A stretch of 64,000 nucleotides of DNA, taken from Heteronotia binoei (lineage: Eukaryota). The stretch spans positions 75,206,001-75,270,000 of the forward strand of contig NC_083224.1 of assembly GCF_032191835.1 (NCBI RefSeq), in the 5' to 3' direction. The translations under genes were made by a program, and so were the position numbers. A model generated the notes under the pieces. That model had not been told where the DNA came from and searched no databases. It saw only the letters and a list, made by a program, of their open reading frames with translations. Shown piece by piece: positions 2,772-41,540 of the stretch; the stretch's first letter is position 1; every line of letters starts with the position of its first letter.

Positions 2772-2916
2772 GTTCAAGCAACAGTGGTAGGTTTTCTGGC
2801 ATCAATTGCTGCAGTGGTATTTGGCTGGATCCCAGATGGACACTTCAGCATTGGCCATGCCATTCTTCTCTGCGCTAGTAGCGTGGCTACAGCCTTCATA
2901 GCTTCCCTTGTGTTGG
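2772..2916 (+). CDS. SLC41A1: SLC41A1 coding exon
   Basis: ttctag|GTT...TTG G|gtaag; 145 nt; [48 protein letters not shown]. Confidence 0.96.
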
Positions 2917-3018
2917 GTAAGAAGGCTATTCTTTGGAGATGGGCAGGGAGAGGGGAAAGTGTTCAGTCTCTGCGCTGCTGTTGCAACAAGGCTAAACTGC
3001 CTCTCTCTGGTCCTCTAG

Positions 3019-3165
3019 GCATGATCATGATTGGCGTAATCATCGGCTCTAGGAAGATGGGCATTAACCCTGACAATGTGGCTACGCCTATTGCTGCAAG
3101 TCTGGGTGATCTCATCACTTTAGCTTTGCTTTCTGGGATCAGCTGGGGCCTCTACATAGAGCTAG
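3019..3165 (+). CDS. SLC41A1: SLC41A1 coding exon (first MgtE D2 motif [14 protein letters not shown])
   Basis: cctctag|GC ATG...CTA G|gtaag; 147 nt; [48 protein letters not shown]. Confidence 0.96.
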
Positions 3166-4118
3166 GTAAGATAAAGGAGGTTGCATGGCCTTTTTATGTT
3201 GCATATTTTTGGTGCCATAAGAAAGTGACTGGAAATTATCTTGGATTCCTTAGCCCATCCCTCCTCCCCCTCATCTAGTTCTTAAGGTGCATTTGATGTT
3301 GCACTAGTCTAGCACAGACATACTGCTGACTTTCTGCAATGCATGGTTTGCAAAACAGGAGTTCATTGTGCATGCATCCTTCCTTCTCAAGAGCTAACTT
3401 TCTTTTCTCTTCCCTTGTCAGTTAGCTCCAAATCACATGTGCACTGTAAAGCTCAGAAACTTTGGAATGTGATTGCAAACTGCTCTTTCTGTGCGGCCAT
3501 CTGATTTGCAAACTTAGTATTAATGTGTTTAAAACTACTGTTCTGTTTGTCACACATCAGAAAGTTGCTACTTACACATCTAGAGCTGCCTTCCCATGTT
3601 TCAGGTGTCCAGTCCAAAGTGCTTTCAGTGGTATTTACAATTTTGGCCTTACTCATGGTTTAGAGAACTACACACACATCCAATAGTAAGCTTCCAGTCC
3701 TTGCTCTGCTGATTCTCTTAACCATCACTGTGTTAATTGTTAATTCCTAGTGCTCACAGAACATTTTAGTGGAGAGTTAAACTAGGCACCAGGCAAAGGT
3801 CAGCTTGCACTTAAAACAAGAACCTTTCTACAAACTCCGCAACTGATAGCTGGAAATGAACCCTTAGCCATGTGGACTGCTGGATATCCGTTCAGACTGT
3901 ATATATTGCAAGGGATGGCTATGTTGGAGCAGTGCATCTGAACTCCCAACATCGAGCTGTGCTTGAGTGCTGCTTAAATACTATGTGAATGAGAGCCCAG
4001 TGTTGGCAGGTTAACACAGGATGGGGGTGCTTTACTGCATGCTTCTGGGTGTGGAGTGGGATCTGATGTCTGCTTATCACCCTGGTTGTTCTCTGACTTC
4101 CTGTTTCTTTCCTCTCAG

Positions 4119-19592: not shown

Positions 19593-21954
19593 TCCGGGAT
19601 TTGGTCCTAAGTAATGCCCAAGACTTGGTGAGAGATGTAAAAGTGATTGCGCCACTTGGGAGCAGTGACCATAATGTTATTGATTTCACCGTTTGTATAA
19701 ATAGGGAGCTGTCCAAAAAGACCGCCACAACCACGTTTAACTTTAAAAGGGGTAAATACACTGAGATGAGGAGGCATGTGAGGAGGAAACTGAAAGGAAA
19801 GGTACATACGGTCAAAACCCTTGGGGAAGCTTGGACGCTATTTAAAACTATAATCCTAGAAGCTCAGATAAAATACATACCACAAGTTAGGAAAGGCACA
19901 AACAGGCATAAGAAAAGGCCTGCATGGTTAACAAACAAAGTAATGGAAGCTGTAAAAGGTAAGAAGGACTCCTTTAAGCGGTGGAAAACCAGTCCAAGTG
20001 AGATTAGTAAAAGGGAACACAGTCTGTGGCAAATCAAATGCAAGACTGTGATCAGGCAGGCAAAAAGGGACTATGAGGAGCATATTGCAAAAAACATAAA
20101 GACCAACAATAAAACTTTCTTCAAATATATTAGAAGTAGGAAACCAGCCAGGGAGGCAGTGGGGCCCTTGGATGACCATGGGGTAAAAGGATTACTGAAG
20201 GAGGATAGGGAAATGGCTGAGAAGCTAAATGAATTTTTTGAGTCCGTCTTCACTGTGGAAGACGAGAACTTTTTGCCCGCCCCAGAACCACTAATTTTGG
20301 AAGGGGTGTTGAAAGACCTGAGTCAGATTGAGGTGACAAAAGAGGAGGTCCTACAACTGATAGACAAATTAAAAACTAATAAGTCACCGGGTCCGGATGG
20401 CATACATCCGAGAGTTCTGAAAGAACTCAAAGTTGAACTTGTGGATCTTCTAACAAAAATCTGTAATCTTTCATTGAAATCTGCCTCCGTTCCTGAGGAC
20501 TGGAAGGTAGCAAATGTCACCCCCATCTTTAAAAAGGGTTCCAGAGGAGATCCGGGAAATTACAGGCCAGTCAGTCTGACTTCAATACCGGGAAAGTTGG
20601 TAGAAACCATTATCAAGGACAGAATGAGTAGGCACATTGATGAACACGGGTTATTGAGGAAGACTCAGCATGGGTTCTGCAAGGGAAGATCTTGCCTCAC
20701 TAACCTGTTACATTTCTTTGAGGGGGTGAACAAACATGTGGACAAAGGAGACTCGATAGATGTTGTTTACCTTGACTTCCAGAAAGCTTTTGATAAAGTT
20801 CCTCATCAAAGGCTCCTTAGAAAGCTTGAGAGTCATGGAGTAAAGGGACAGGTCCTCTTGTGGATCAAAAACTGGCTGAGTAATAGGAAGCAGAAAGTGA
20901 GTATAAATGGGCAGTCTTCGCAGTGGAGGACGGTAAGCAGTGGGGTGCCGCAGGGCTCGGTACTGGGTCCCATGCTCTTTAACTTGTTCATAAATGATTT
21001 AGAGTTGGGAGTGAGCAGTGAAGTGGCCAAGTTTGCGGATGACACTAAACTGTTCAGGGTGGTGAGAACCAGAGAGGACTGTGAGGAACTCCAAAGGGAT
21101 CTGTTGAGGCTGGGTGAGTGGGCGTCAACGTGGCAGATGCGGTTCAATGTGGCCAAGTGCAAAGTAATGCACATTGGGGCCAAGAATCCCAGCTACAAAT
21201 ACAAGTTGATGGGGTGTGAACTGGCAGAGACGGACCAAGAGAGAGATCTTGGGGTCGTGGTAGATAACTCACTGAAAATGTCAAGACAGTGTGCGTTTGC
21301 AATAAAAAAGGCCAACGCCATGCTGGGAATTATTAGGAAGGGAATTGAAAACAAATCAGCCAGTATCATAATGCCCCTGTATAAATCGATGGTGCGGTCT
21401 CATTTGGAGTACTGTGTGCAGTTCTGGTTGCCGCACCTCAAAAAGGATATTATAGCATTGGAGAAAGTCCAGAGAAGGGCAACTAGAATGATTAAAGGGC
21501 TGGAGCACTTTCCCTATGAAGAAAGGTTGAAACGCTTGGGACTCTTTAGCTTGGAGAAACGTCGACTGCGGGGTGACATGATAGAGGTTTACAAGATAAT
21601 GCATGGGATGGAGAAAGTAGAGAAAGAAGTACTTTTCTCCCTTTCTCACAATACAAGAACTCGTGGGCATTCGATGAAATTGCTGAGCAGACAGGTTAAA
21701 ACGGATAAAAGGAAGTACTTCTTCACCCAAAGAGTGATTAACATGTGGAATTCACTGCCACAGGAGGTGGTGGCGGCCACAAGTATAGCCACCTTCAAGA
21801 GGGGTTTAGATAAAAATATGGAGCAGAGGTCCATCAATGGCTATTAGCCACAGTCTATGTGTGTATATAAAATTTTTGGTCACTGTGTGACACAGAGTGT
21901 TGGACTGGATGGGCCGTTGGCCTGATCCAACATGGCTTCTCTTATGTTCTTATG
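19593..21954 (+). mobile_element. CR1 LINE, 5'-truncated, with an uninterrupted partial ORF2 (19601-21847: end of EN, complete RT, C-terminus)
   Basis: 748 open codons containing NYRPVSLTS, YLDFQKAFDKV, GVPQGSVLGP and KFADD; 3' UTR and (TTCTTATG)2 tail; TGAGAAC at 19586-19592 and 21953-21959 is a probable TSD. Confidence 0.97.
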
Positions 21955-22083
21955 AGAACACACTTCAAATTTCTTTCACAACATTTTCCAGTCCAGAGTT
22001 CCTCCCCAGCAAAATTCTTCCAAAATCATGTCCCATGAGTTGTATTGAAAACAGTCAGAAAATTTTTCCAGGATTTTAGAAGT

Positions 22084-23101
22084 CTCTCTCTCTCGGCTTG
22101 GCTTCGCGAACGAAGATCTAAGAAGGGTGCAATAGTCCACGTCCGCTGCAGGCTCGCTGGTGGCTGACAAGACCAACGCGGGACAGGCAGGTCCGGCCAC
22201 AGTGGCCGCAGGGAAAAGTCTGATTTAGGGTTGGTGCTGTAGCAGTGCGATTCTTCCTCAATCTCCTTTTGTCCTCAAGACCAGCTATGCGTGCGTTCTC
22301 AAAGGAAGAGACAGCCTGGTGGATGGTGTGCCTCCATGCTTTGCGATCTGAGGCTAGGTCAGACCACTGGTGATGGTTGATGCGACAGGTGCCAAGGGAT
22401 TTCTTCAAGGAGTCCTTGTACCTCTTCTTTGGTGCCCCTCTATTTCGATGGCCGGTGGAGAGTTCGCCATACAGGGCAATCTTGGGAAGGCGGTGGTTTT
22501 CCATCCTAGAAATATGCCCTGCCCACCGCAGCTGCGTCTTCAGCAGCAGTGCCTCGATGCTGGTAACCTCCGCCCGCTTGAGGACTTCAGTGTTGGTCAC
22601 AAAGTCACTCCAGTGGATGTTGAGGATGGTGCGAAGGCAGCGCTGATGAAAGCGCTCGAGGAGTCGCAGGTGATGATGGTATAAAACCCAAGATTCGGAG
22701 CCGTAGATGAGGGTTGTCATCACAATCGCTTTGTAAACATTGATCTTTGTGCCTTTTTTCAGATGCTTGTTGCTCCACACTCTTTTGTGCAGTCGGCCAA
22801 ATGCATGGTTTGCCTTTGCCAGCCTGTTGTCAATCTCCTTGTCGATCTTGGCATCTGAGGAGATGATGCACCCCAGGTAGCTGAACTGCTGGACTGTCTT
22901 CAGAACTGATTCACCCACAGTGATGCAGGGAGGGTGATAATCTTCCTGGGGTGCAGGCTGGTGGAGAACTTCTGTCTTCTTCAGACTAACTTCTAGGCCG
23001 AATAGCTTGGCAGCCTCTGCAAAGCAGGACGTCATATGCTGCAGAGCTGATACCGAGTGGGAGACGAGTGCAGCATCATCAGCAAACAGTAGCTCTCGGA
23101 T
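22084..23101 (-). mobile_element. RTE-clade LINE, 5'-truncated, with a 12-bp TSD
   Basis: Open frame from RELLFADDAALV through the C-terminal CGHCGRTC...HQRAC finger to the stop at 22118; (GA)n tail; GATTTTAGAAGT at 22072-22083 and 23102-23113. Confidence 0.95.
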
Positions 23102-23797
23102 GATTTTAGAAGTATTACCTTGAATATACTTAAGGTGAATTTGCAATAAATAACTAAATAAAATAAAGGTAGTACCTTCTAACGTTATTACTTGAACATC
23201 ATCACAGGGCAAAATGTTGTTTTCTTTTCCTCCCATACCCTGGGATTTGTGCCTTTGGAATGCATATGTGGTACATTTTATTATAACAAGTCACAGTTGG
23301 AATCTGGCCAAAAATATTGATGCTCCTGAGGAATAGCTGCATATGGGGTCCTCCCAGAAATGGCGCTCCTGCCCACTTACTGTATACCTGGATGTTTTAG
23401 TATCACTAGTTGTAAACAGGTACAAAAGATAAACCTAGAATATTAAACAATTTTCATCTTCTCAGAGAGGAGCTGTGTTAGCCAGTTGCAGCAAAAAATA
23501 AGAGATCAAGAATGTCCTGAAAGACTAAAATGGCTGCTGCTGTTTTTTTGCATACTGTAGTTTCTAATGGCAATTTGTGTTTATTTCTGTGTAGAGTTCA
23601 GAAGGGCATTATTAACACATGATGGTATATGTCGTGTTGAAGGACAAATCCAAGATGATACAACTGATGCTATTAGGTCCCTTACTAAGGCATGCCAGTC
23701 TCCAGGTAGGGACTGGAGAATCTCCCAGAATCACAGCTTGACTCCAGACTAGAGATCAATTCCCTTGGAGAAAATGGAAGCTTTGGAGGGTTGACTC

Positions 23798-31174: not shown

Positions 31175-33751
31175 TTGATCACATCCCTTATGAATATACA
31201 GTAGAGGTGAAGAATAGGTATAAGGAACTAGAGTTGATAGAGTGCCTGAAGAATTATGGATGGAGATTCATGAGATTGTACAGAAGGCAGCAATCAGCAC
31301 CATCCAAACGAAAAAGAAATGCAAGGAAGCAAAGTGGCTGTCTGAAGAAGCTTTACAAAAAGCTAAGGAAAGAAGGAAAGCAAAAGACAAAGGTGAAAAG
31401 GAAAGATTTCCAGAGAACAGCAGGGAGAAATAAGGAGGCCTTCCTGAAGGAACAATGCAAAGCAATAGAGGAAAATAACAGAATGAGAAAGACAAGAGAT
31501 CTCTTCAAGAAAATTGGAGAAATCAAGGGAATGTTTTGTGCAAAGATGGCCATGATAAAGGACAAAAATAGTAGGGACCTAACAGCAGCAGAAGAGATTA
31601 GGAAGAGGTGGCAAGAATACACAGAAGAATTGCACAAGAACGATCTCAATGTCCTTGACAACCATGATGGTGAAATCGCTGACTTCGAGCCAGACACCCT
31701 GAAGTGCGAAGTCAAATGGGCCTTAGAAAGCGTTACTAACAACAAAGCAAGTGGAGATGATGGTATCCCAGTTGAGCTAGTCAAAGTCCTAAAAGACGAT
31801 GCTGTTAAAGCAATACACTCATCATGTCAGCAAATTTGGAAAATGTAACAGCGGCCACAGGATTGGAAAAGGTCAGTTTATATTCCAGTCCCAAAGAAGG
31901 GTAATGCCAAAGATTGTTCAAACTATTGCACCATTGCACTCATTTCACATGCCAGCAAAGTCATGTTAAAGATCCTACAAGCTAGGCTTCAGCAGTATGT
32001 GGATCAGGAACTACCAGAAATACAAGCTGGGTTTCGGAGAGGTAGAGGAACTAGAGATCAAATTGCCAACTTTCGCTGGATTATGAAGAAAGCACAGGAG
32101 TACCAGAAAAACATCTATTTCTGCTTCATTGACTACACGAAAACATTTGATTGTGTGGATCTCTGTCACGTTCTCAGGGTGCAGGCAGGCAGGAGTCCAA
32201 AGCCAGTCCAAGGTCAAAGTCCAGGAAGTCAAGCAGGAGCCAAGTCACCAATGCAGAATCACAAACCAGAATCAGAAGTCAATGTCCAAAAGCCACAAGG
32301 TCAGGGTGCCAAGGAAATCAAGCAGATCATGAAGGAGCATGGATGCAAGCCAGAAAATAGACTTGTTGCTTCCACAAGATTACCAGGTCCTGGGTGGGAA
32401 CTATATGGGAGTGTCAATCAGCCTGCTCCCTGGGTGGCAGTGACTCTGCTAGAACTCAGGGCTGAGAGATCTGAAGCATCGGTATGCCTCATGTCTTCGC
32501 TCTGAAAGTTGTTTCTGGAGCCTACTTTGAACTCTTGAGAAGGGAGGAGGAGAGCTCGGAGGAGATTGATCATAAACAGCTGACACTGGTGCCTGGCGAG
32601 TGATTGATGGGCCAGCTGCTGTTTGTTCAGCTGAGGGATTGGCTGGCAACTCTTCCAGGTCTGTTAACCCTTCCAACTCCTCGTCAGGGCTCATGACACT
32701 CACAACAAACTGTGGCAAGTCCTTAAAGAGATGGGAGTACCAGACCACCTCACATGTCTCCTGAGAAACCTGTATAAGGGTCAAGAAGCGACTGCCAGAA
32801 TGGGATATGGAGCAACTGATTGGTTCAGAATAGGAAAAGGAGTTCAACAAGGATGTATATTGTCACCCTGCTTATTTAATTTATATGCAGAGTTCATCAT
32901 GCAGAATGCTGGGCTGGATGAATCACAAGCCAGAATTAAGACTGCCGGGAAAAACATTAACAATCTCAGATATGCAGACGACACCACTCTAATGGCAGAA
33001 AGTGAAGTGGACCTAAAGAACCTCTTGTTGAGGATGAAAGAGAAGAGCACAAAAGTAGGCTTGAAACTCAACTTCAAAAAAACTAAGATCATAGCATCCA
33101 GCCCATCACTCCTTGGCAAATAGAAGGGGAAGACATGGAGATAGTGACCGACTTCACATTCCTGGGATCCAAGATCACTGTAGATGGTGACTGTAGCCAT
33201 GAAATTAAAAGACGTTTACTTCTTGGGAGGACAGCTGTGGTGAACCTGGGCAGTATAATAAAAAGTAGAGACATCACCCTGCCAACAAAAGTCTGTATAG
33301 TCAGAGCAATGATATTCCCATTAGTAATGGATGGCTGTGAGAGTTGGACCATAAGGAAGGCCAAGCACAGAAGAATAGATATTTCAAATTGTGGTGCTGG
33401 AGAAGACTCTTGATAGTCCCTCGGACTGCAAGAAGATCAAATCAGTCAGTCCTAAGGGAAATCAACCCTGATTGTTTCCTGGAAGGTCAGATGCTGAAGC
33501 TGAAGCTTAAATACTTTGGCTACCAAATGAGAAGACAGCACTCATTGGAGAAGACCCTGATGCTGGGAAAGACAGAAGGCAAAAGAAGGGGACGGCAAAA
33601 GATGAGATGGCTGGACAGCGTTACTGATGTAACTGACATGAATTTGAGCGGACTTCAGAGGATGGTGGAAGACAGGAGGTCCTTGGTCCATGGGGTGACT
33701 TGGTCCAGGGGTCTCAAAGAATCGGACTTGACTGTGCGACTGAACAACAAC
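31175..33751 (+). mobile_element. BovB (RTE clade) LINE, 5'-truncated, degenerate, interrupted by a solo LTR
   Basis: ORF remnants MLKILQARLQQYV, YFCFIDY, MGVPDHLTCLLRNLY, QGCILSPCLFNLYAE, RYADDTTL, EKTLMLGK; tail ACTGAACAACAAC; many frameshifts and stops. Confidence 0.93.
32164..32698. mobile_element. Solo LTR (Gypsy-like) inserted in BovB
   Basis: 535 bp with TGTCACG...CATGACA termini. BovB reads ...tgtgtggat / cacaacaaactgtggcaag across it; CTC on both flanks. Confidence 0.78.
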
Positions 33752-34695: not shown

Positions 34696-34819
34696 ATGGG
34701 GCATCACGACCATATGTTTAAAGTCCTAATTATTGGGGATGCCACAGTTGGGAAGACCTCGCTGGTTCAGCGGTATGCAAACGATAGTTTCAACAAGCAT
34801 TATAAATCCACTGTGGGAG
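34696..34819 (+). CDS. RAB29: RAB29 (RAB7L1) small GTPase, first coding exon
   Basis: aacATGG...GGA G|gtgag; 124 nt; [41 protein letters not shown], containing the P-loop GDATVGKTS. Confidence 0.95.
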
Positions 34820-36089
34820 GTGAGTGATTTTTCTGCTTACACACTAAAAGACATATTTGCAATGAATGAGGTGTTCTAATGAACTATTTAAAATACTGAT
34901 TGACTCTAAAAGTGTGCTGCCTTTTGACTAATAGCTGTGTGTTTGTGTGCCTTTTGTTTCCATACACCAAGCACTGTATTGGGGTTGACTGACTTCAGCC
35001 TTGCATTGGCTACTTTCATGCTATCCTGGTGGTCTGTGCCATGTATTAAATTTATCAAGTGAAGTGCACTTTTAGGCTATCTGAGCAATTAAGGTAGAGC
35101 TAATTGCATAGAGTGACTTGGGCCTGCTGTTATGCCTAAGTGTTCCAAGAGAAATTGATCAGTGGTCCACTAACAGTTCTAATCTATTTTATGTACACTT
35201 TTGTTCTATTTGCAGGTTAAAGTAATGGTTGCAGTCCTGCAACCACATCCTGAGGAGTTTCCTTTCTCCTTAAAATGTTTTTTTCATAGCTTCCAGACAA
35301 ATTGAGGGTTCTAGTGCACTTGAAATCTGGCACACAGTTACATGTCATTTGGCTGGTCCCTACTAAAGGCTATATAGGCAAATTAATATGAGAGTGAAAG
35401 AGAGAAGGTTTAGTGGGGAATGATACTTTCTCGTTTCTACATTTAATCAGTCGAGTCTATTGGTTAGCTACCAACATGTGTGTGATGTAATAAAGACAGG
35501 GTGTGAGTGAGAGAGCGCAAGCAAGTTTCACAAGGGCAATGATTTCTTAAGTTACTTCCTACATCTTGATGATATCAGTATTGGTGTTTCTCCTTGCTAC
35601 AAGAACACACAGCATGTGCAGTGTTCTAGCCCAACAGTGTGGCTTTAGTGATGTGTCCATCCTCTGTGAACAGTCATGCAGGTTTTGTATTCAGACTGTT
35701 CCTCACACACACACACCCCTTCTTGTGTGTGAAGTCCATGGTGAAACGACAACCTCTCTATGTTTGCTTTGCTTGGACCACCACCCTTTCCAAGGCACTT
35801 CTTTATAATTTTGTCGTAGCCTGAATCTCATAATCAGTAATCACAATTATTCTATGTTTATCTTTCACTAGGAAAATTACACTTAATAAGTGCTTTACTG
35901 AATTAGACCAGTGGTCCATAGTTTAAGTATTCTTTTTTGGACAGTGGCCAGAGAAAAACATTTCCAGAATAAATATTCTTCAGAGAGTGAACCTTCAAGT
36001 CACTGTCAGTCATTTACAGTTTCCTTATAATCAACTTAGATTTGCTGTGAATTTCTGGCCTAGTATCCACAACTGCCTCTTACTTAGCA

Positions 36090-36525
36090 TTTATTTATTT
36101 ATTTGCTTCATTTATACCCCACTTTTCTCCCCTATGGGATCCCAAAGCAGCTTACACCTTTCTAATTCACTCAATTTTATCTTCACAACCCTGTGAGGTA
36201 GGTTACACTAAGAGTAAGGGACTGGCCCAGCATCACCCAGCAAGCTTCCATGGTACAAGTTGGGATTTGAACCTGGATCTCCCAGAGTCTGACACTCTAC
36301 CCACTATACCACACTGTCTCCAAGTGTGTGCTCTATTTATGTAGAGTTTATATCCTGCTTCTCTCCAGTGGGGACCCAAAGTAACCTTACAGCATTGTTC
36401 TTGCTCTGTTCTATCATCACAACGTCCCTCTGAGGTAGGCTAGGCTGAAAAGAATAACTAAGATCACCCAGTGAGATTGTGTGGCAAAGTGGGGATTGGA
36501 ACTTGGTTTTCTTGGCTCCTAGCTT
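36090..36525 (-). mobile_element. Two adjacent Squam3-like SINE copies in RAB29 intron 1
   Basis: Each has a tttat-rich tail end, gggacccaaag, acaaccctgtgaggtagg and cacccag..agcttccatg motifs; boundaries approximate. Confidence 0.65.
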
Positions 36526-38384
36526 GTTTAATCTGCCTTGAATCCAAGTGATAAAAGCACCCTATAAATAATGTAAATAAATAAATAAACTCTGCCCACA
36601 AATAAATAAAAGTCTGCTCACTGGCTCTACCTACAATGTTTTATTTTAAATCTCATTTATAATATTGATCTTTGGCTCTTGGAGGTTTTCATATGTGATT
36701 TGATTTTGGGAATACTCCTTTTTGTTTCAAACTGGGCATAAATATTTTGCTGTTGTTGAAGAATAGATAGCCATGTTGTGAGAGATGGTGCAGTTGTAGA
36801 TCAGTCAGGCTGACATCTATTGATCAGGAGATATACCAGAAAGGCATACCTTGCTATGCTGAGACTGCAGATGGTTTGCTAACAGAAAAGAGTGTTAGCA
36901 AGTTTGATGGTACAATCTTGATGTAGTGTATTCTTTTTTTATTTCAGAAAAAAATTGACTGCCCCTATTGCTTATTGGGTCTTAAGTTATTACTCTGTTT
37001 ACAGTGATGTTCAGTGACTCTAAGCGCTCATTTGCCAAATGAGGAAAGATTATAAAAATGAATGTTCATAGCAGGGTGCTTTGGTGATGATGGCTTCTTT
37101 GCTTCCTTAGGTTGAAATCCTAAACATTCCAATGTGGAAGTAATTCCATTTGAAGCACTGGAACTCTTCCAACACAAATATTTGGCTTAATAGATGTATT
37201 TTTAAAAAATGTTTATGCTCCCTGAATGTATGTAACTGTTATTCCCAGGGGGAATGCCTGAGTTATCAAACAACTCTGAAGGCTTGAGTTGTCTTTACCT
37301 GCCCTTAGTTGGTGCCGAAAACAATACATCTGGTTGAAGGGAAGGGCTAGCCATACTTTTAACCTCAAATTAAAGAGGAAGGGGTAGGAAGGAAGACTTA
37401 AGAGGATGAGTTCAGTTGGCAGGCAGATACACATATGGAAACAAGCAGTCCTCTGTACCTTGTTCCCAAACCCAGTTTCTCTGGACTTTGATGTGAAGTG
37501 TCAGTATAGTGAGCCTGTCTCCTTTTGCTATAAAAATTGTGAGTTTTCTTAACTGTTTCTGTTATGAATAGGTGTTTTGGCATATTGAATTAAAACATCA
37601 ACGAGCATTATAAATGTTGAAGTTACGGTATGAACAGTGAAAGTAACACCTCTTCCCATTCTGCTTCTAAACTCTTGAAAACAAACAAATGCTGGAGAGT
37701 TCTAACTGTGAAGGCCTGGATATTTATTTGTTTATTTATTTTTATCCTGTCCTCCTTCCAGTGAGACCAAGGTGGCATACATCATTCTCCACTCCTCCAG
37801 TTAATCTTCAGAATCACCCTGCCTGATAGTTTAGGCTGAGAGGCAGAGACTGACCTAGATTGCTAACCTGCCTCATGAGGTTATTGTGCAGATCAAGAGG
37901 AGAGGAGAATGATGTAAAGCTGCTTTGGTCCCCACTGCGGAGAAAGACTGTACTTTTCCTATGTAGAGGCTGCAGAGAGGGGGGAGGAGTTGAAAGCAAT
38001 CTACCTCATCTATTTTGCCCCCCCATCCCTTCTTTCTCAATCAATGCCCCTCCTCTAATAACCTACCCCACATTCCCACATTTTCTCCATTTCTCTTCCC
38101 AAAAGCTTCCTTCTCAACATACCTTCCCTCTATCTTTCCTGTCCCTCCTCAGCCCCACCCCCTGACAATGCCATGACACTCACCCACAGCAAATTTCTAG
38201 TGCCCATTGTATTTCTCCTCACAACAGGCCTTACTACTAGTAAATATACTAATTCGCCTAAACTAGAGCTTGTAAAGCAGCCACTGTCATTTATAGTACA
38301 TTGGTAGAGATGGAAGATAAGTAATTTGCAAGTAATTTAATGGCAGATCCGACAGTTGCTTGTTCATAATATAGTGTGTGTTGT

Positions 38385-38530
38385 GTGTCGTCACTTCTAA
38401 CTTATGGTGACCCCATGAATTAATGACTTCCAAAATGTTCTATCATTAACAGTCTTACTCAGGTCTTTCAAACTGAGGGCCATGGCATTCTTGATTGAGT
38501 CAATCCATCTCATATCGTGTCTTCCTCTTT
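38385..38530 (-). mobile_element. BovB 3' fragment
   Basis: Reverse complement resembles BovB 3' coding end and UTR (ttgattgagtcaatccatctcat...cttcctc). Confidence 0.55.
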
Positions 38531-38571
38531 TTTTTCTTCTTTAAACATTTCCTAGCATTTTTTTAAAATTT

Positions 38572-38853
38572 AGAGTGCTGAGTTGCAGTACTGCAGTCCA
38601 AGCTCTGCTCACAATCTGAGTTTGATCCCAGCGGAAACTGGGCTCAGGTAGCTGGCTCAAGGTTGACTCAGCCTTCCATCCTTCCAAGGTCGGTAAAATG
38701 AGTACCTAGCTTGCTGGGGGTAAAGTGTAGATTACTGGGGAAGGCAATGGCACACCACCCCCTAAAAAGTCTGCCAGGAAAACGTCATGATGTGATGTCA
38801 CCGCATGGGTCAGTAACGACTCGGTGCTTGCGCAGAGGGCTACCTTTACCTTT
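38572..38853 (+). mobile_element. Sauria SINE
   Basis: gagttgcagtactgcagtcc...ggttgactcagccttccatcc...ggggaaggcaatggc...acctttaccttt tail. Confidence 0.85.
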
Positions 38854-40099
38854 TTTTACGTTACATACATATCACCCCACAAAAAAAAATGGAAATTTAC
38901 TGGGATGTGGAGTAAAATTTAAAAGTAAGGATTGTAAGAACAGGGATGTATACAATCAAGAGAAAGATCAACACACAATGAGGGCAAGAAAGGTCAGGTG
39001 TGCTCAGAAAATGGCCCCCACCAAATGGTTTGGAATCCATCCCATACCACATGAGAGGGACCTCTTCCACACCCTCCTTCCCTGAAATACCTGGGACCTG
39101 CCAGCAAGAGTAAAAAACCTCAAAATTAACAGATAAACTAAGGGAGGAAAAGGAAGATGCCAAAGCTGTGGGCTCACCATCCCAAATTCATATACAGACT
39201 TGGGGGGGGGAGGGGGAGGAAAAAGCCAAGGCAAAGGGCTTACCTTCCCAAAGACACTTCACATATTAAAATGACAGTTTTATTGCTAACTATATAATAA
39301 CATTTCTATTGCTAACTATATAATATCATTTCTGTTAACTGACTGTATTCATGGCTGGCACCTTTTTGATTTGATTTTTTCCCCTTAACAACCACAAATC
39401 TGGATACAGAGCTTGAATATTTCCACTAAAACATTACTATCTACTCTTATCTTCTGTGTCTTTGTATTCCCGAGTCAATTTCTGCTTTGTTTAGTTCTTA
39501 ATATGTTCCAATTCCTATTCTTCTAATGCTTCCCCAGAAGGGTTATGCTGGATTTTATTGTTTCTTACCCATTCTTCCTGCCATGCTATAATCTTCATAG
39601 CCTCCCTGCACCTCTCAGCCTTCAATTTTCTCTTCATTGTGTCATGACTTTCCAGACTAAGCTGTTGTTCAAGAACCACAGGTATCTCTTCTGAGATCTG
39701 TGTCGGCCCCTTAGCTTCCAGATTCTCTTGCAGTTCGTCCACCTCTGAAGATATTGCAGGAGTCACCAAACTCCCATCAGGTTGCTCCTTCAGCTCCTCT
39801 TCCATGCTAGATTCTTCCTTGTTCTGAGCTATGGCCCTAGCCATTGTCTGCTCATCTGAGGCTCTACCAGACCTGCCTGGAGAAATCACCAACTCAGAAA
39901 AATGGAGTGGTTTTGAGGATCTTTTTTAGCATTAGAGGACGAATACTCCAATATTGTAAATATTCTGTGAGCTGTAATTCCAAAAAGTCAAGGCAACTTT
40001 CCATTCTCAATAGCATCAAGGGAACTGTTGGGCAAGCAACTTTGCCCTTTCATCACACCCTCTCCAGCCTAGAAACAGCAGCTCTCCAGCAGCCCTGGC

Positions 40100-40291
40100 C
40101 CCACTCAATGCACAGCAGCCAAGAAGGTCAGAGCGCCTGCTCCGGCTGCAACACCACTGAGGATGTTCTCCGCAGCTGAGAACGAAACGTCTGGAAGGAA
40201 AACTTTCTCCAGTAGAACACGGCACTTGAACCTGAAAGATTCTACAAACCCTAATGATGTTACCAGCCGTGAAAACCTGAAATCTTTGATT
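40100..40291 (+). mobile_element. Penelope-like element 3' / pLTR fragment carrying the hammerhead
   Basis: HHR core followed by ccagtagaacacggcacttgaacctgaaagattctacaaaccctaatgatgttaccagccgtgaaaacctgaaatctttgat, which is shared with 41235-41316. The 5' boundary is uncertain. Confidence 0.7.
40154..40194 (+). ncRNA. Minimal type-I hammerhead ribozyme motif in a Penelope-like element
   Basis: CCA-CTGAGGA-T-GTTCTC(CGCAGCT)GAGAAC-GAAA-CG-TC-TGG: CUGANGA and GAAA core, 6-bp stem II, 3-bp stem I (CCA/UGG), palindromic ACGU in place of stem III, and a GUC cleavage triplet. Confidence 0.75.
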
Positions 40292-40429
40292 ACTTAGGAT
40301 AGCAGGAGAAAATGATTTTTAGGCTTAGATCTACTGGAGTGGGAACTAAATTTGGACAGTGATTTTTGGCAAACTCCTATTCAGCCGTTTCCTCAGCCCT
40401 TTTCTTTCTTCCCTTCCATGGCTCCCCAG

Positions 40430-40501
40430 TGGACTTTGCTCTGAAGGTGGTACAGTGGTCAGAGTCTGAGACCGTGAGGCTACAGCTATGGGATATTGCA
40501 G
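40430..40501 (+). CDS. RAB29: RAB29 coding exon 2
   Basis: ccccag|TG GAC...GCA G|gtgag; 72 nt; (V)DFALKVVQWSESETVRLQLWDIA(G). Confidence 0.96.
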
Positions 40502-41183
40502 GTGAGCTGCATGAAATTTCCTGGATCTTTATAGCATTGTACTGTAATGTACTATAATTATACTGCTTATTTGTCTTTTCCCTTCAGAAAAGCATAACTC
40601 TCAAGTGCTATTTCTATTGCTTTAAAAAAAGTCTGACATATTTAGCATTTACTCCTGCAAAAATAGGAGCTTTGGAAACCAAAGATTTGGTTAGAACATA
40701 ATTTAGCATTTTGGTTAGCAGTAAAGATACATCAGCTAAAAGATCAGAGCTTATTTATGATTTTTAGTGACCTGTTGTGTTGTCTACTTTTATTTCTATC
40801 TGTCTGTCACACCCACGGAACAAACTGGTGAATTTTGGCCAGACAGCAGTTGAAGCTTCTGGCATTCCCTATTTACAGTTTCATCTATTACTAACTGGAA
40901 GTGGCTTGTCTCTAGTATAATTGATAGCATGACTAATGCATTGGTGATTTTGGTTGTCTTCCTGCCACCTTCACTAACAAGGACACAAGCCTGTCTCACA
41001 GGGTTTTCACAGTCCTGCCTCTGAGACTGACCATGTGAGAAGGGATAGGAATAGGTAATTATTGCTGAAGGATGAACTCCTCTAGTCTTGAATTGCAAAC
41101 AGTTTTGTCACCCTTATGCATTTCTTCCAGCATATTTGATTTAAAGAAGGGGATGTACTAGTGCTCATCTATGATAATAAAAG

Positions 41184-41316
41184 CATTAGGGTTTGTAGAA
41201 TCTTTCAGGATCAAGTGCCGTGTTCTACCGTGTTCCAGTAGAACACGGCACTTGATCCCGAAAGATTCTACAAACCCTAATGATGTTACCAGCTGTGAAA
41301 ACCTGAAATCTTTGAT
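41184..41316 (+). mobile_element. Short Penelope-like insertion with an inverted 5' segment
   Basis: 45-bp inverted repeat (41184-41228 and 41238-41282) flanked by the direct repeat TGATAATAAAAGCATT (41172-41187 and 41313-41328). Confidence 0.8.
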
Positions 41317-41540
41317 AATAAAAGCATTGTTAAAATTGCTTCATTTTGATGAAAAAATTGCCATTTCTTTACGCTTTTCCAATACAAATAAGTGCAATTT
41401 AAAAACTGCTCATAATATATTTGATATAAATTATGAGATGATTTTTACCAGCAAAGGAGCTCACTGAGCCAAGTGTCAAAACTTGCATATTGAGCCCAAT
41501 GTTCAAATTTTGATCCCATCACTCACAGTCACTTTGGTAA

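What the first reader, a model, noticed from the sequence alone, without database searches (positions are those of the whole stretch)
40154..40194. Minimal hammerhead ribozyme with an intact core on the sense strand of a RAB29 intron
Seen: CUGA-G-GA (40157-40163), one extra U, a perfect 6-bp stem II (GUUCUC/GAGAAC), GAAA (40184-40187), then CG-UC and UGG pairing with the upstream CCA. Predicted cleavage is after C40191, about 240 nt upstream of the exon-2 acceptor. Known: Penelope-like retroelements carry minimal type-I HHRs whose stem III is replaced by a short palindrome (here ACGU) and which cleave mainly as dimers; some amniote intronic HHRs are conserved. Inference: RAB29 pre-mRNA contains a potentially self-cleaving RNA. 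Only one intact copy is in this transcript, so cleavage would need an intermolecular dimer and may be weak.
Basis: partly seen in the sequence, partly recalled or inferred. Interest (0 to 1): 0.75.

Follow-up and report, generated by a model that had tools for sequence, protein, structure and literature searches.

The report
Penelope retrotransposon hammerhead relic in RAB29
The hammerhead-ribozyme motif is really there, but it belongs to a dead, shortened copy of a very abundant Penelope-like jumping gene that landed in a RAB29 intron. Nothing suggests that it cuts the RAB29 transcript, so the find is ordinary.

Summary
It has an intact core, an extra U, a perfect 6-bp helix II, GAAA, the ACGU palindrome, C17 at 40191 and a 3-bp helix I (CCA/UGG). 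It lies 238 nt upstream of a RAB29 acceptor.

It is not a locus-specific ribozyme. RNA reads from the same species pile up on 40042-40290 only. That stretch is a 5'-truncated copy of an abundant dispersed repeat, about 2% from its family consensus.

The repeat has the hallmarks of a Penelope/Poseidon-type element:
- It has no poly(A).
- It has an optional 35-bp "tail" (40256-40290).
- A fold-back sister insertion lies at 41178-41316.
- The layout matches that published for the Anolis element PAc. A9-U-G10.1 is an ATG (40163), and the cut site is 26 nt after it.

PAc's hammerhead cleaves only with its own protein. As in that paper, no reads start or end at the cut site here. With one copy, no helix III and a 3-bp helix I, cleavage of RAB29 pre-mRNA is unlikely. 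At 2% divergence the motif would stay intact by chance about 44% of the time.

No Rfam hammerhead model matches. This scan has already noted the same kind of element many times elsewhere in this genome (115 notes).

In passing, the family's RNA reads carry an ADAR-like A-to-G hyperediting signature that also hits the ribozyme core.

The parts
40042..40290 (+). 5'-truncated insertion of a Penelope/Poseidon-type retroelement: the pLTR end plus the first 128 nt of its ORF
   Evidence: Read depth is 0 outside this stretch and rises steadily towards 40290. Loose ends upstream of 40042 agree with each other (0.94-0.98), so the family continues upstream of this copy's start. Loose ends after 40290 are random (0.45-0.57), so that is the element's 3' terminus. 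There is no poly(A).
40154..40194 (+). Minimal type-I hammerhead motif. Helix I is 40154-40156 with 40192-40194. The core C3-A9 is 40157-40163. The extra U is 40164. Helix II is 40165-40170 with 40178-40183. G12-A14 is 40184-40186. The palindrome ACGU is 40187-40190. C17 is 40191.
   Evidence: The architecture matches the published PLE min-HHR consensus (PMC4209133).
40163..40290 (+). Remnant of the element's ORF start. The ATG at 40163-40165 is formed by A9, the extra U and G10.1. 42 codons are open to the end of the copy.
   Evidence: translation. [quoted passage not shown] Here 40191 minus 40165 is 26. The PAc ORF start is printed.
40256..40290 (+). Optional 35-bp PLE 'tail' between the two alternative 3' termini of family copies
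   Evidence: random loose ends lie behind 40254/40255 and behind 40288-40290. In the sister fold-back only one arm carries this piece. Tails of 30-40 bp are a PLE signature (PMC8557442; PMC11167929).
41173..41328 (.). Sister insertion of the same family without a hammerhead. It is a fold-back of two head-to-head 3' ends. The inverted arm runs from about 41188 to 41228 and the direct arm from 41234 to 41316. It is flanked by a 12-15-bp A+T-rich target-site duplication (41173-41187 and 41314-41328).
   Evidence: 96% and 94% identity to 40208-40290 and 40212-40262. The sequence was read.
34696..34819 (+). RAB29 first coding exon (ATG to donor)
40430..40501 (+). RAB29 next coding exon. The intron that holds the element is 34820-40429.
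   Evidence: The reading frame continues ...STVG/VDFALKVVQW...WDIAG.

Best explanation
40042-40290 is a dead, 5'-truncated copy of an abundant Penelope-like retroelement of the Penelope/Poseidon type, inserted in sense orientation into the RAB29 intron 34820-40429. In such elements the hammerhead sits in the pseudo-LTR and straddles the ORF start, so that A9, the extra U and G10.1 spell the ATG. Reverse transcription starts at two sites roughly 90 and 130 nt into the ORF. Every insertion therefore ends with the hammerhead plus the first part of the ORF, with or without a 30-40-bp tail. The motif's job, if it has one, belongs to the parent element's RNA. In tandem copies two motifs can build helix III together, and in the Anolis element cleavage needs the element's own protein. 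In the RAB29 pre-mRNA it is a lone passenger with no helix III and a 3-bp helix I. It is intact only because the copy is young. Shown here: the motif, the repeat's boundaries, family abundance, the tail, the ATG and cut-site spacing, and the absence of read ends at the cut site. Inferred: the Penelope identity, because no RT/endonuclease ORF was seen, and the lack of activity at this locus.
For:: RNA reads pile up on 40042-40290 alone, the 5' loose ends agree and the 3' loose ends are random. There are two 3' termini 35 bp apart. Only five majority differences from the family were listed (40061, 40076, 40153, 40230, 40233), which is about 2%. Two of them, 40153 and 40233, are CpG decay. No places were listed where molecules begin or end; a sister fold-back insertion carries a one-sided tail and an A+T-rich TSD. 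ATG at 40163, C17 at ORF nt 29, and the frame is open to the end of the copy. (PMC11167929): PAc has the same ATG and stem II layout and the same 26-nt spacing. It has identical CGAAACGTC at ORF nt 21-29. Its tail lies between two RT start sites. It integrates at ATT and other A+T-rich sites. Its hammerhead is inactive without PAc protein, and no RNA-seq ends map to its cut site. (PMC4209133): four consensus features of PLE min-HHRs are all present. (PMC8557442): 5' truncation, inverted partner copies and one-sided 30-40-bp tails are PLE hallmarks.
Against: No reverse transcriptase or GIY-YIG ORF of this family lies in the window. The 42-aa N-terminal peptide found nothing in Pfam or among 1.84 billion proteins. 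That query is too short to have power, so the result is blank rather than negative. No clean target-site duplication flanks the hammerhead-bearing copy. The homology to PAc was judged by eye from a printed supplement passage and was not aligned formally. RNA-seq cannot exclude low-level cleavage, and the unique intron flanks had no coverage, so this locus itself was not tested.
Confidence: 0.85

Rival explanations
1. The motif is an active ribozyme at this locus. It cleaves RAB29 pre-mRNA after C40191, either by pairing its ACGU palindrome with another family transcript or with help from the element's protein, and so lowers RAB29 output.
For: The core is fully intact with a favourable C17. Family RNA is abundant in the same cells, with depth in the hundreds in 6% samples of two runs, so trans partners exist. 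The PAc hammerhead does cleave when its protein is present.
Against: The intermolecular helix III would be only 4 bp and helix I only 3 bp. Predicted folds of the 51-71-nt context do not give the double-hammerhead, and a competing pairing of 40145-40149 with loop 2 appears. Single min-HHRs were inactive and dimers weak in vitro. There are no read ends at the cut site at family level here or in Anolis. Intactness needs no selection, since 0.98^41 is about 0.44.
Confidence: 0.04
2. The repeat is a non-autonomous 'non-LTR retrozyme' monomer derived from a Penelope pLTR, not a truncated copy of the autonomous element itself.
For: A 2026 preprint (10.64898/2026.07.22.740005) finds such families in reptiles, closely related to pLTRs, with many dispersed monomers. 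No RT ORF of the family was seen here.
Against: Loose ends after 40290 are random rather than the start of a next monomer. Depth falls gradually towards the 5' end, with a consistent continuation upstream of 40042. Both are the pattern of 5' truncation of a longer unit. The part after the ATG is colinear with the PAc ORF start (by eye). There is no tandem copy in the window.
Confidence: 0.09
3. It is a chance match to the hammerhead consensus, or a conserved amniote intronic hammerhead of the HH9/HH10 type.
For: No Rfam model matches, which is what a chance motif would give.
Against: The pattern occurred in 0 of 100 shuffles, and the perfect helix II and helix I pairing come on top of that. 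The motif is shared by hundreds of family reads. It has all four PLE-specific features. The HH9 and HH10 models do not match even at E up to 10, and the host sequence is a young repeat.
Confidence: 0.01

Closest known systems
Hammerhead of PAc, the Poseidon element of Anolis carolinensis (Frangieh et al. 2024, Mob DNA, PMC11167929)
   Same: The ORF start codon is formed at the start of stem II. The cut site is 26 nt after the ATG, so C17 is ORF nt 29. CGAAACGTC is identical at ORF nt 21-29, which gives the peptide ETSG in both. The downstream blocks are colinear up to the two 3' termini that define a 30-40-bp tail. No RNA-seq ends map to the cut site.
   Different: Helix II has a different sequence: 6 perfect pairs here against 5 pairs with two wobbles in PAc. 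Three positions are changed on both sides, which is compensatory. The first 40 ORF nt are 25/40 identical by eye. The termini lie at about +92 and +128 here, against +111-118 for the main site in PAc. This copy is a truncated relic with no ORF behind it.
Metazoan PLE min-HHR consensus (Cervera and de la Pena 2014, PMC4209133)
   Same: There is an extra nucleotide between A9 and G10.1. G10.1-C11.1 is present. Helix II is long (6 bp) and helix I is short. Positions 15.2-16.2 are palindromic and there is no loop 3. Most copies occur as single motifs in truncated elements.
   Different: Helix I is 3 bp here against 4-5 bp in the fluke families (Drosophila virilis has 2 bp). N7 is G.
Non-LTR retrozymes of animals (Cervera and de la Pena 2020, PMC7229834; Li et al. 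2026 preprint)
   Same: They carry type-I hammerheads related to PLE pLTRs, and dispersed monomers exist.
   Different: Retrozymes are tandem arrays that give circular RNAs. Here there is a single dispersed copy with random 3' flanks and no tandem partner.
Conserved amniote intronic hammerheads (Rfam HH9 and HH10)
   Same: Both are intronic, lie on the sense strand and have a hammerhead core.
   Different: Those have a stable helix III and tertiary loop contacts, are single-copy and are conserved across amniotes. This one matches neither model and is a young repeat copy.

Membership tests
Hammerhead ribozyme (general consensus) | Core C3 U4 G5 A6 N7 G8 A9, G12 A13 A14, A15.1-U16.1 and H17 | tested here: met
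   CUGAGGA at 40157-40163, GAA at 40184-40186, A40187 and U40190, C40191.
Hammerhead ribozyme (general consensus) | Three helices around the core in one molecule | tested here: not met
   Helix II has 6 bp and helix I has 3 bp. Helix III cannot form within one molecule, because A15.1 and U16.1 would enclose only 2 nt. It can exist only between two molecules.
Hammerhead ribozyme (general consensus) | Self-cleavage after position 17 | tested here: inconclusive
   Activity cannot be assayed with these tools. At family level, RNA reads show no pile of starts or ends at 40191/40192 (table 6). The locus itself had no unique coverage.
Rfam hammerhead models (Hammerhead_1, Hammerhead_3, HH9, HH10, Hammerhead_II) | Covariance-model score at gathering threshold | tested here: not met
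   There was no match at gathering over the window, and none at E up to 10 on 39800-40600.
PLE min-HHR (Cervera and de la Pena 2014) | [quoted passage not shown] | tested here: met
   U40164.
PLE min-HHR (Cervera and de la Pena 2014) | G10.1-C11.1 pair and an enlarged helix II | tested here: met
   G40165-C40183, with 6 perfect pairs.
PLE min-HHR (Cervera and de la Pena 2014) | Palindromic 15.2-16.2 with minimal or absent loop 3 | tested here: met
   ACGU at 40187-40190.
PLE min-HHR (Cervera and de la Pena 2014) | Location in the pLTR of a Penelope-like element | tested here: inconclusive
   The host repeat shows PLE insertion hallmarks and the PAc layout. No RT/GIY-YIG ORF of the family was seen, and the peptide searches were blank.
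Penelope-like element insertion | Frequent 5' truncation with a defined 3' end and no poly(A) | tested here: met
   depth gradient and loose ends; the end has no A run.
Penelope-like element insertion | Optional 30-40-bp tail present at one end | tested here: met
   Termini lie at 40254/40255 and 40290. The fold-back at 41178-41316 has the 35-bp piece on one arm only.
Penelope-like element insertion | Adjacent inverted 5'-truncated copy (complex or inverted insertions) | tested here: met
   This is met for the sister insertion at 41178-41316. It is not met for the hammerhead-bearing copy itself.
Penelope-like element insertion | ORF encoding RT plus GIY-YIG endonuclease | not testable with these tools
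   Only 42 codons of the ORF are in the copy, and no eukaryotic genome collection is searchable. phmmer of the peptide gave 0 hits.
Non-LTR retrozyme | Head-to-tail tandem units, each with a hammerhead | tested here: not met
   There is one motif in 64 kb, and the flanks after 40290 are random across the family.

The most novel reading that the evidence does not exclude
When the family's own ORF protein is expressed, it assists folding of lone hammerheads embedded in host introns, as PAc protein does in vitro. Bursts of Penelope activity would then cleave sense-oriented host pre-mRNAs such as RAB29. ADAR hyperediting of the core (A6, A13, A14, A15.1) would act as the host's brake.
Probability: 0.03. 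Interest if true: 0.55.

Novelty: new member of a known kind. Interest (0 to 1): 0.12.

Why it matters
It matters little for RAB29, because this is one of very many relic Penelope hammerheads in this genome. The modest value lies in two points. First, this lizard family keeps the Anolis PAc layout to the nucleotide: the ATG is built from A9, U and G10.1, and the cut site is 26 nt after it. Helix II has changed by compensatory substitutions. This supports selection on the hammerhead at the level of the element, not of the host gene. Second, the family's RNA reads carry an ADAR-like editing signature that would destroy the core. If a lone intronic copy could be shown to cleave in vivo, many host genes would be affected, but no evidence here points that way.

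Tried and rejected
- **Rfam:** the window at gathering and 801 nt at E up to 10 gave no hammerhead match. The only hits were two chance matches, to snoR4a and mir-9418.
- **ORF peptide:** the 42-aa peptide found nothing in Pfam and gave 0 hits at E up to 0.001 among 1.84 billion representatives. The query is too short, so this says nothing either way. The word-index protein search was not run, because its length window (0.55-1.75x of 42 aa) cannot see a full-length element protein.
- **Target-site duplication:** the search around 40042 and 40290 found only a non-flush 6-mer. No direct or inverted partner arm beyond shuffle level lies next to the hammerhead copy.
- **Thermodynamic folds:** the isolated 41-mer keeps helices I and II. 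In the 61- and 141-nt contexts helix II is displaced by pairing of 40145-40149 with loop 2. The cofold gives an extended duplex, not the double hammerhead. The double-hammerhead structure crosses itself in dot-bracket form and could not be scored.
- **Pfam on larger ORFs:** RVT_1 hits lie at 19601-21847, 22118-23236 and 31963-32505. None is adjacent to the element and no GIY-YIG domain was found. They were not linked to this family.
- **Relative's DNA run X13:** a single contig from another locus, so there is no information on the orthologous intron.
- **Lunse et al. 2017:** not held in the paper library.
- **Formal alignment to PAc:** left out, because the PAc letters exist only as a printed supplement passage with no reference. 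The comparison was made by eye.
- **Read laying:** reads were laid only on intronic sequence (39800-40420).

Full report
**Observation**

The + strand at 40154-40194 reads CCA, CUGAGGA, U, GUUCUC, a 7-nt loop, GAGAAC, GAAA, CG, UC, UGG. A pattern asking only for CTGANGA, a gap of 8-38 and GAAACGTC occurs once in the window and in none of 100 dinucleotide-preserving shuffles. The perfect 6-bp helix II and the CCA/UGG pairing come on top of that.

The host gene is RAB29. The exon 34696-34819 begins with ATG, and its best match among solved structures is Rab-7L1 (E 1.4e-17, against 1e-10 for Rab38). Its donor GT is at 34820. The next coding exon begins at 40430 and continues the frame into ...VDFALKVVQW...WDIAG. 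The motif is therefore on the sense strand of the 5.6-kb intron 34820-40429, with 238 nt between C40191 and the acceptor. An AG just before the ATG hints at an untranslated first exon, so "intron 1" may really be intron 2.

**What it sits in**

A self-comparison of the window shows that 40208-40290 recurs at 41234-41316 (96% identity). It recurs again, inverted, at 41228-41178.

I laid two raw RNA runs of the same species label, one RNA contig set and one relative's DNA contigs on 39800-40420 at 80% likeness. Depth is zero in the unique intron on both sides. It rises from about 15-37 at 40031-40051 to about 200-500 per orientation near 40220-40260, then drops to zero after 40303.

Reads that begin matching at 40042 carry an upstream overhang that is the same in 48 and 93 reads (agreement 0.98 and 0.94). 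The family therefore continues upstream, and this copy is 5'-truncated. Overhangs after 40288-40290 (up to 401 reads) and after 40254/40255 (up to 120 reads) are random (agreement 0.42-0.57). Those are two alternative 3' termini of dispersed copies, 35 bp apart.

Only five positions were listed where most family reads differ from this copy: 40061, 40076, 40153, 40230 and 40233. That is about 2% over 249 bp. Two of them are CpG decay in this copy: ACG to ACA at 40153, and CCG to CTG at 40233. The copy is young and decaying neutrally. At 2% divergence a 41-nt motif stays untouched with probability 0.98^41, about 0.44. Its intact core therefore needs no selection.

**Which element**

The repeat has no poly(A) tail. 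It is mostly 5'-truncated. It has a sister insertion at 41178-41316 made of two head-to-head 3' ends. Only one arm of that sister carries the 35-bp terminal piece, and a 12-15-bp A+T-rich target duplication flanks it (41173-41187 and 41314-41328). Craig et al. 2021 list these as hallmarks of Penelope-like elements: strong 5' truncation, adjacent inverted truncated copies, and a 30-40-bp tail at one end (PMC8557442).

Frangieh et al. 2024 characterised PAc, the Poseidon element of Anolis carolinensis (PMC11167929). They report five things about it:
- Reverse transcription starts at two internal sites about 110-120 nt into the ORF, and the sequence between them is the tail.
- The endonuclease prefers ATT and other A+T-rich DNA.
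- The hammerhead shows no cleavage without PAc protein.
- No RNA-seq reads begin or end at the cut site.

In the window, A9 (40163), the extra U (40164) and G10.1 (40165) spell ATG, and 40191 minus 40165 is exactly 26. The frame is open for 42 codons to the end of the copy. The two termini lie about 92 and 128 nt into that frame.

The PAc ORF start is printed in the paper's supplement. By eye, C17 is ORF nucleotide 29 in both. Nucleotides 21-29 are identical (CGAAACGTC, which encodes ETSG in both). The first 40 nt are 25/40 identical without gaps. Short blocks further on are colinear, for example CC[C/T]GAAAGA, ACAA[.]CCCT and GCC[A/G]TGAAA[G/A]CC.

Helix II differs between the two elements yet pairs in both. 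G-C is kept. Three pairs are changed on both sides (C-G to U-A twice, G-U to U-A once). One pair is changed on one side (U-G to C-G). That is covariation at the level of the element lineage.

**Fit to the published ribozyme class**

Cervera and de la Pena 2014 (PMC4209133) defined metazoan PLE min-HHRs by four features that were not part of their search descriptor:
- a conserved G10.1-C11.1 pair;
- a long helix II with a short helix I;
- palindromic 15.2-16.2 without a real helix III.

All four are present here. The same paper found no detectable cleavage of a single motif and only weak cleavage of dimers and trimers. Most genomic motifs there were single copies in truncated elements. The Rfam hammerhead models do not match the window, either at gathering or at E up to 10 on 801 nt. 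The motif is a hammerhead by core and PLE-class architecture, not by the curated models.

**Does it work here?**

As one molecule it cannot form helix III, because A15.1 and U16.1 would enclose two nucleotides. Helix I has only 3 bp, and the family consensus G at 40153 does not extend it.

There is no second motif in 64 kb. Cleavage would therefore need a 4-bp intermolecular helix with another transcript, or the element's protein.

Predicted folds keep helices I and II in the bare 41-mer. In the 61- and 141-nt contexts helix II is replaced by pairing of 40145-40149 with loop 2. The two-strand fold gives an extended duplex rather than a double hammerhead.

The pile-up is about 290-680 reads deep at the site. 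The tool lists no place where molecules begin or end (table 6; its threshold is a fifth of the neighbouring depth). No depth step appears at 40192, and no listed loose end falls there. This agrees with what was reported for Anolis.

This negative is at family level. The unique flanks of the RAB29 copy had no coverage, so the locus itself is untested.

I put about 4% on meaningful cleavage of RAB29 pre-mRNA.

**Core conservation**

Among positions with at least 10% other letters, 11 lie in the 41-nt motif, including U4, A6, A13, A14 and A15.1. 28 were listed in the remaining 208 nt, with up to 11 more not shown.

Nearly all of these changes are A>G or T>C. In the contig set they are at 1-6% in the core, while true subfamily variants reach 12-59% (40053, 40101, 40177 in loop 2, 40198, 40230). 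The whole element is homogeneous, so this data set cannot show selective constraint.

**Side observation: editing**

In 40145-40245, 19 of 32 A and 10 of 20 T vary as A>G or T>C, against 1 of 23 G and 0 of 26 C. A positions that do not vary mostly follow a G (8 of 13), while varying ones rarely do (3 of 19).

34 reads in one run share an overhang that is the reference 40173-40202 with 11 of 13 A read as G and no other change. Both spared A follow a G.

This is the ADAR signature on both strands of an unstranded library. It turns GAAA into GGGG in those reads.

Without DNA of the same animal I cannot tell live editing from transcripts of genomic copies in which editing was fixed by retrotransposition.

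**Rivals**

- A retrozyme monomer (9%) cannot be fully excluded, because no RT ORF was seen. However, the random 3' flanks, the graded 5' truncation and the colinearity with the PAc ORF speak for the autonomous element's own end.
- An active locus-specific ribozyme gets 4%.
- Chance, or an HH9/HH10-type conserved intronic ribozyme, gets 1% or less.

**Prior notes of this scan**

A word search returned 115 notes on hammerhead and Penelope in this same genome. Among them are follow-ups that call the family a very abundant lizard or gecko Penelope-like element with fold-back insertions. I used these as leads only. The boundaries, the tail, the fold-back neighbour and the PAc layout were tested here.

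**Verdict**

As biology of RAB29 it is an ordinary passenger relic.

Noticed in passing
window 40145-40245 (family-level RNA reads laid on it): There is an ADAR-like hyperediting signature. 19/32 A and 10/20 T vary as A>G or T>C, against 1/23 G and 0/26 C, and A after G is spared. 34 reads share a version of 40173-40202 with 11 of 13 A read as G, which converts the hammerhead GAAA to GGGG. There is no matched DNA control, so fixed edited genomic copies are an alternative.
   Followed up: partly
window 41173-41328: A fold-back mini-insertion of the same Penelope-type family lies in the next RAB29 intron. Two head-to-head 3' ends turn at the equivalent of 40208-40212, which is 17-20 nt past the hammerhead cut site. 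It has no hammerhead, a 35-bp tail on one arm only and a 12-15-bp A+T-rich target duplication.
   Followed up: partly
window 40030-40048: A short palindrome (GGGCAA ... TTGCCC) sits exactly at the 5' junction of the truncated copy. No clean target-site duplication was found for this copy. It is unexplained and may be a junction artefact of second-strand synthesis.
   Followed up: no
window 40165/40189 and 40084/40110 (reads of run X22): A few RNA reads (3 and 7) join opposite strands at the two arms of hammerhead helix II and at 40084/40110. They come either from genomic fold-back copies that turn at stem II or from cDNA template switching at hairpins.
   Followed up: no
window 2784-3278 (+): An ORF piece here has a Pfam MgtE divalent-cation-transporter match (E 4e-8). 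It is likely an exon of an SLC41-type gene upstream of RAB29. From memory, this is the human PARK16 neighbourhood arrangement. It was not checked further.
   Followed up: no
window 19601-23236 and 31963-32505: Reverse-transcriptase ORFs with RVT_1 hits lie here, including an open 748-aa one at 19601-21847 (E 1e-36). They are other retroelements upstream of RAB29. No GIY-YIG domain was found and they were not linked to the hammerhead family.
   Followed up: partly
window 40144-40177: GGCUGC upstream of the motif is complementary to GCAGCU in loop 2. In 61-141-nt folds this pairing displaces helix II, so it could act as an off-state of the motif.
   Followed up: no
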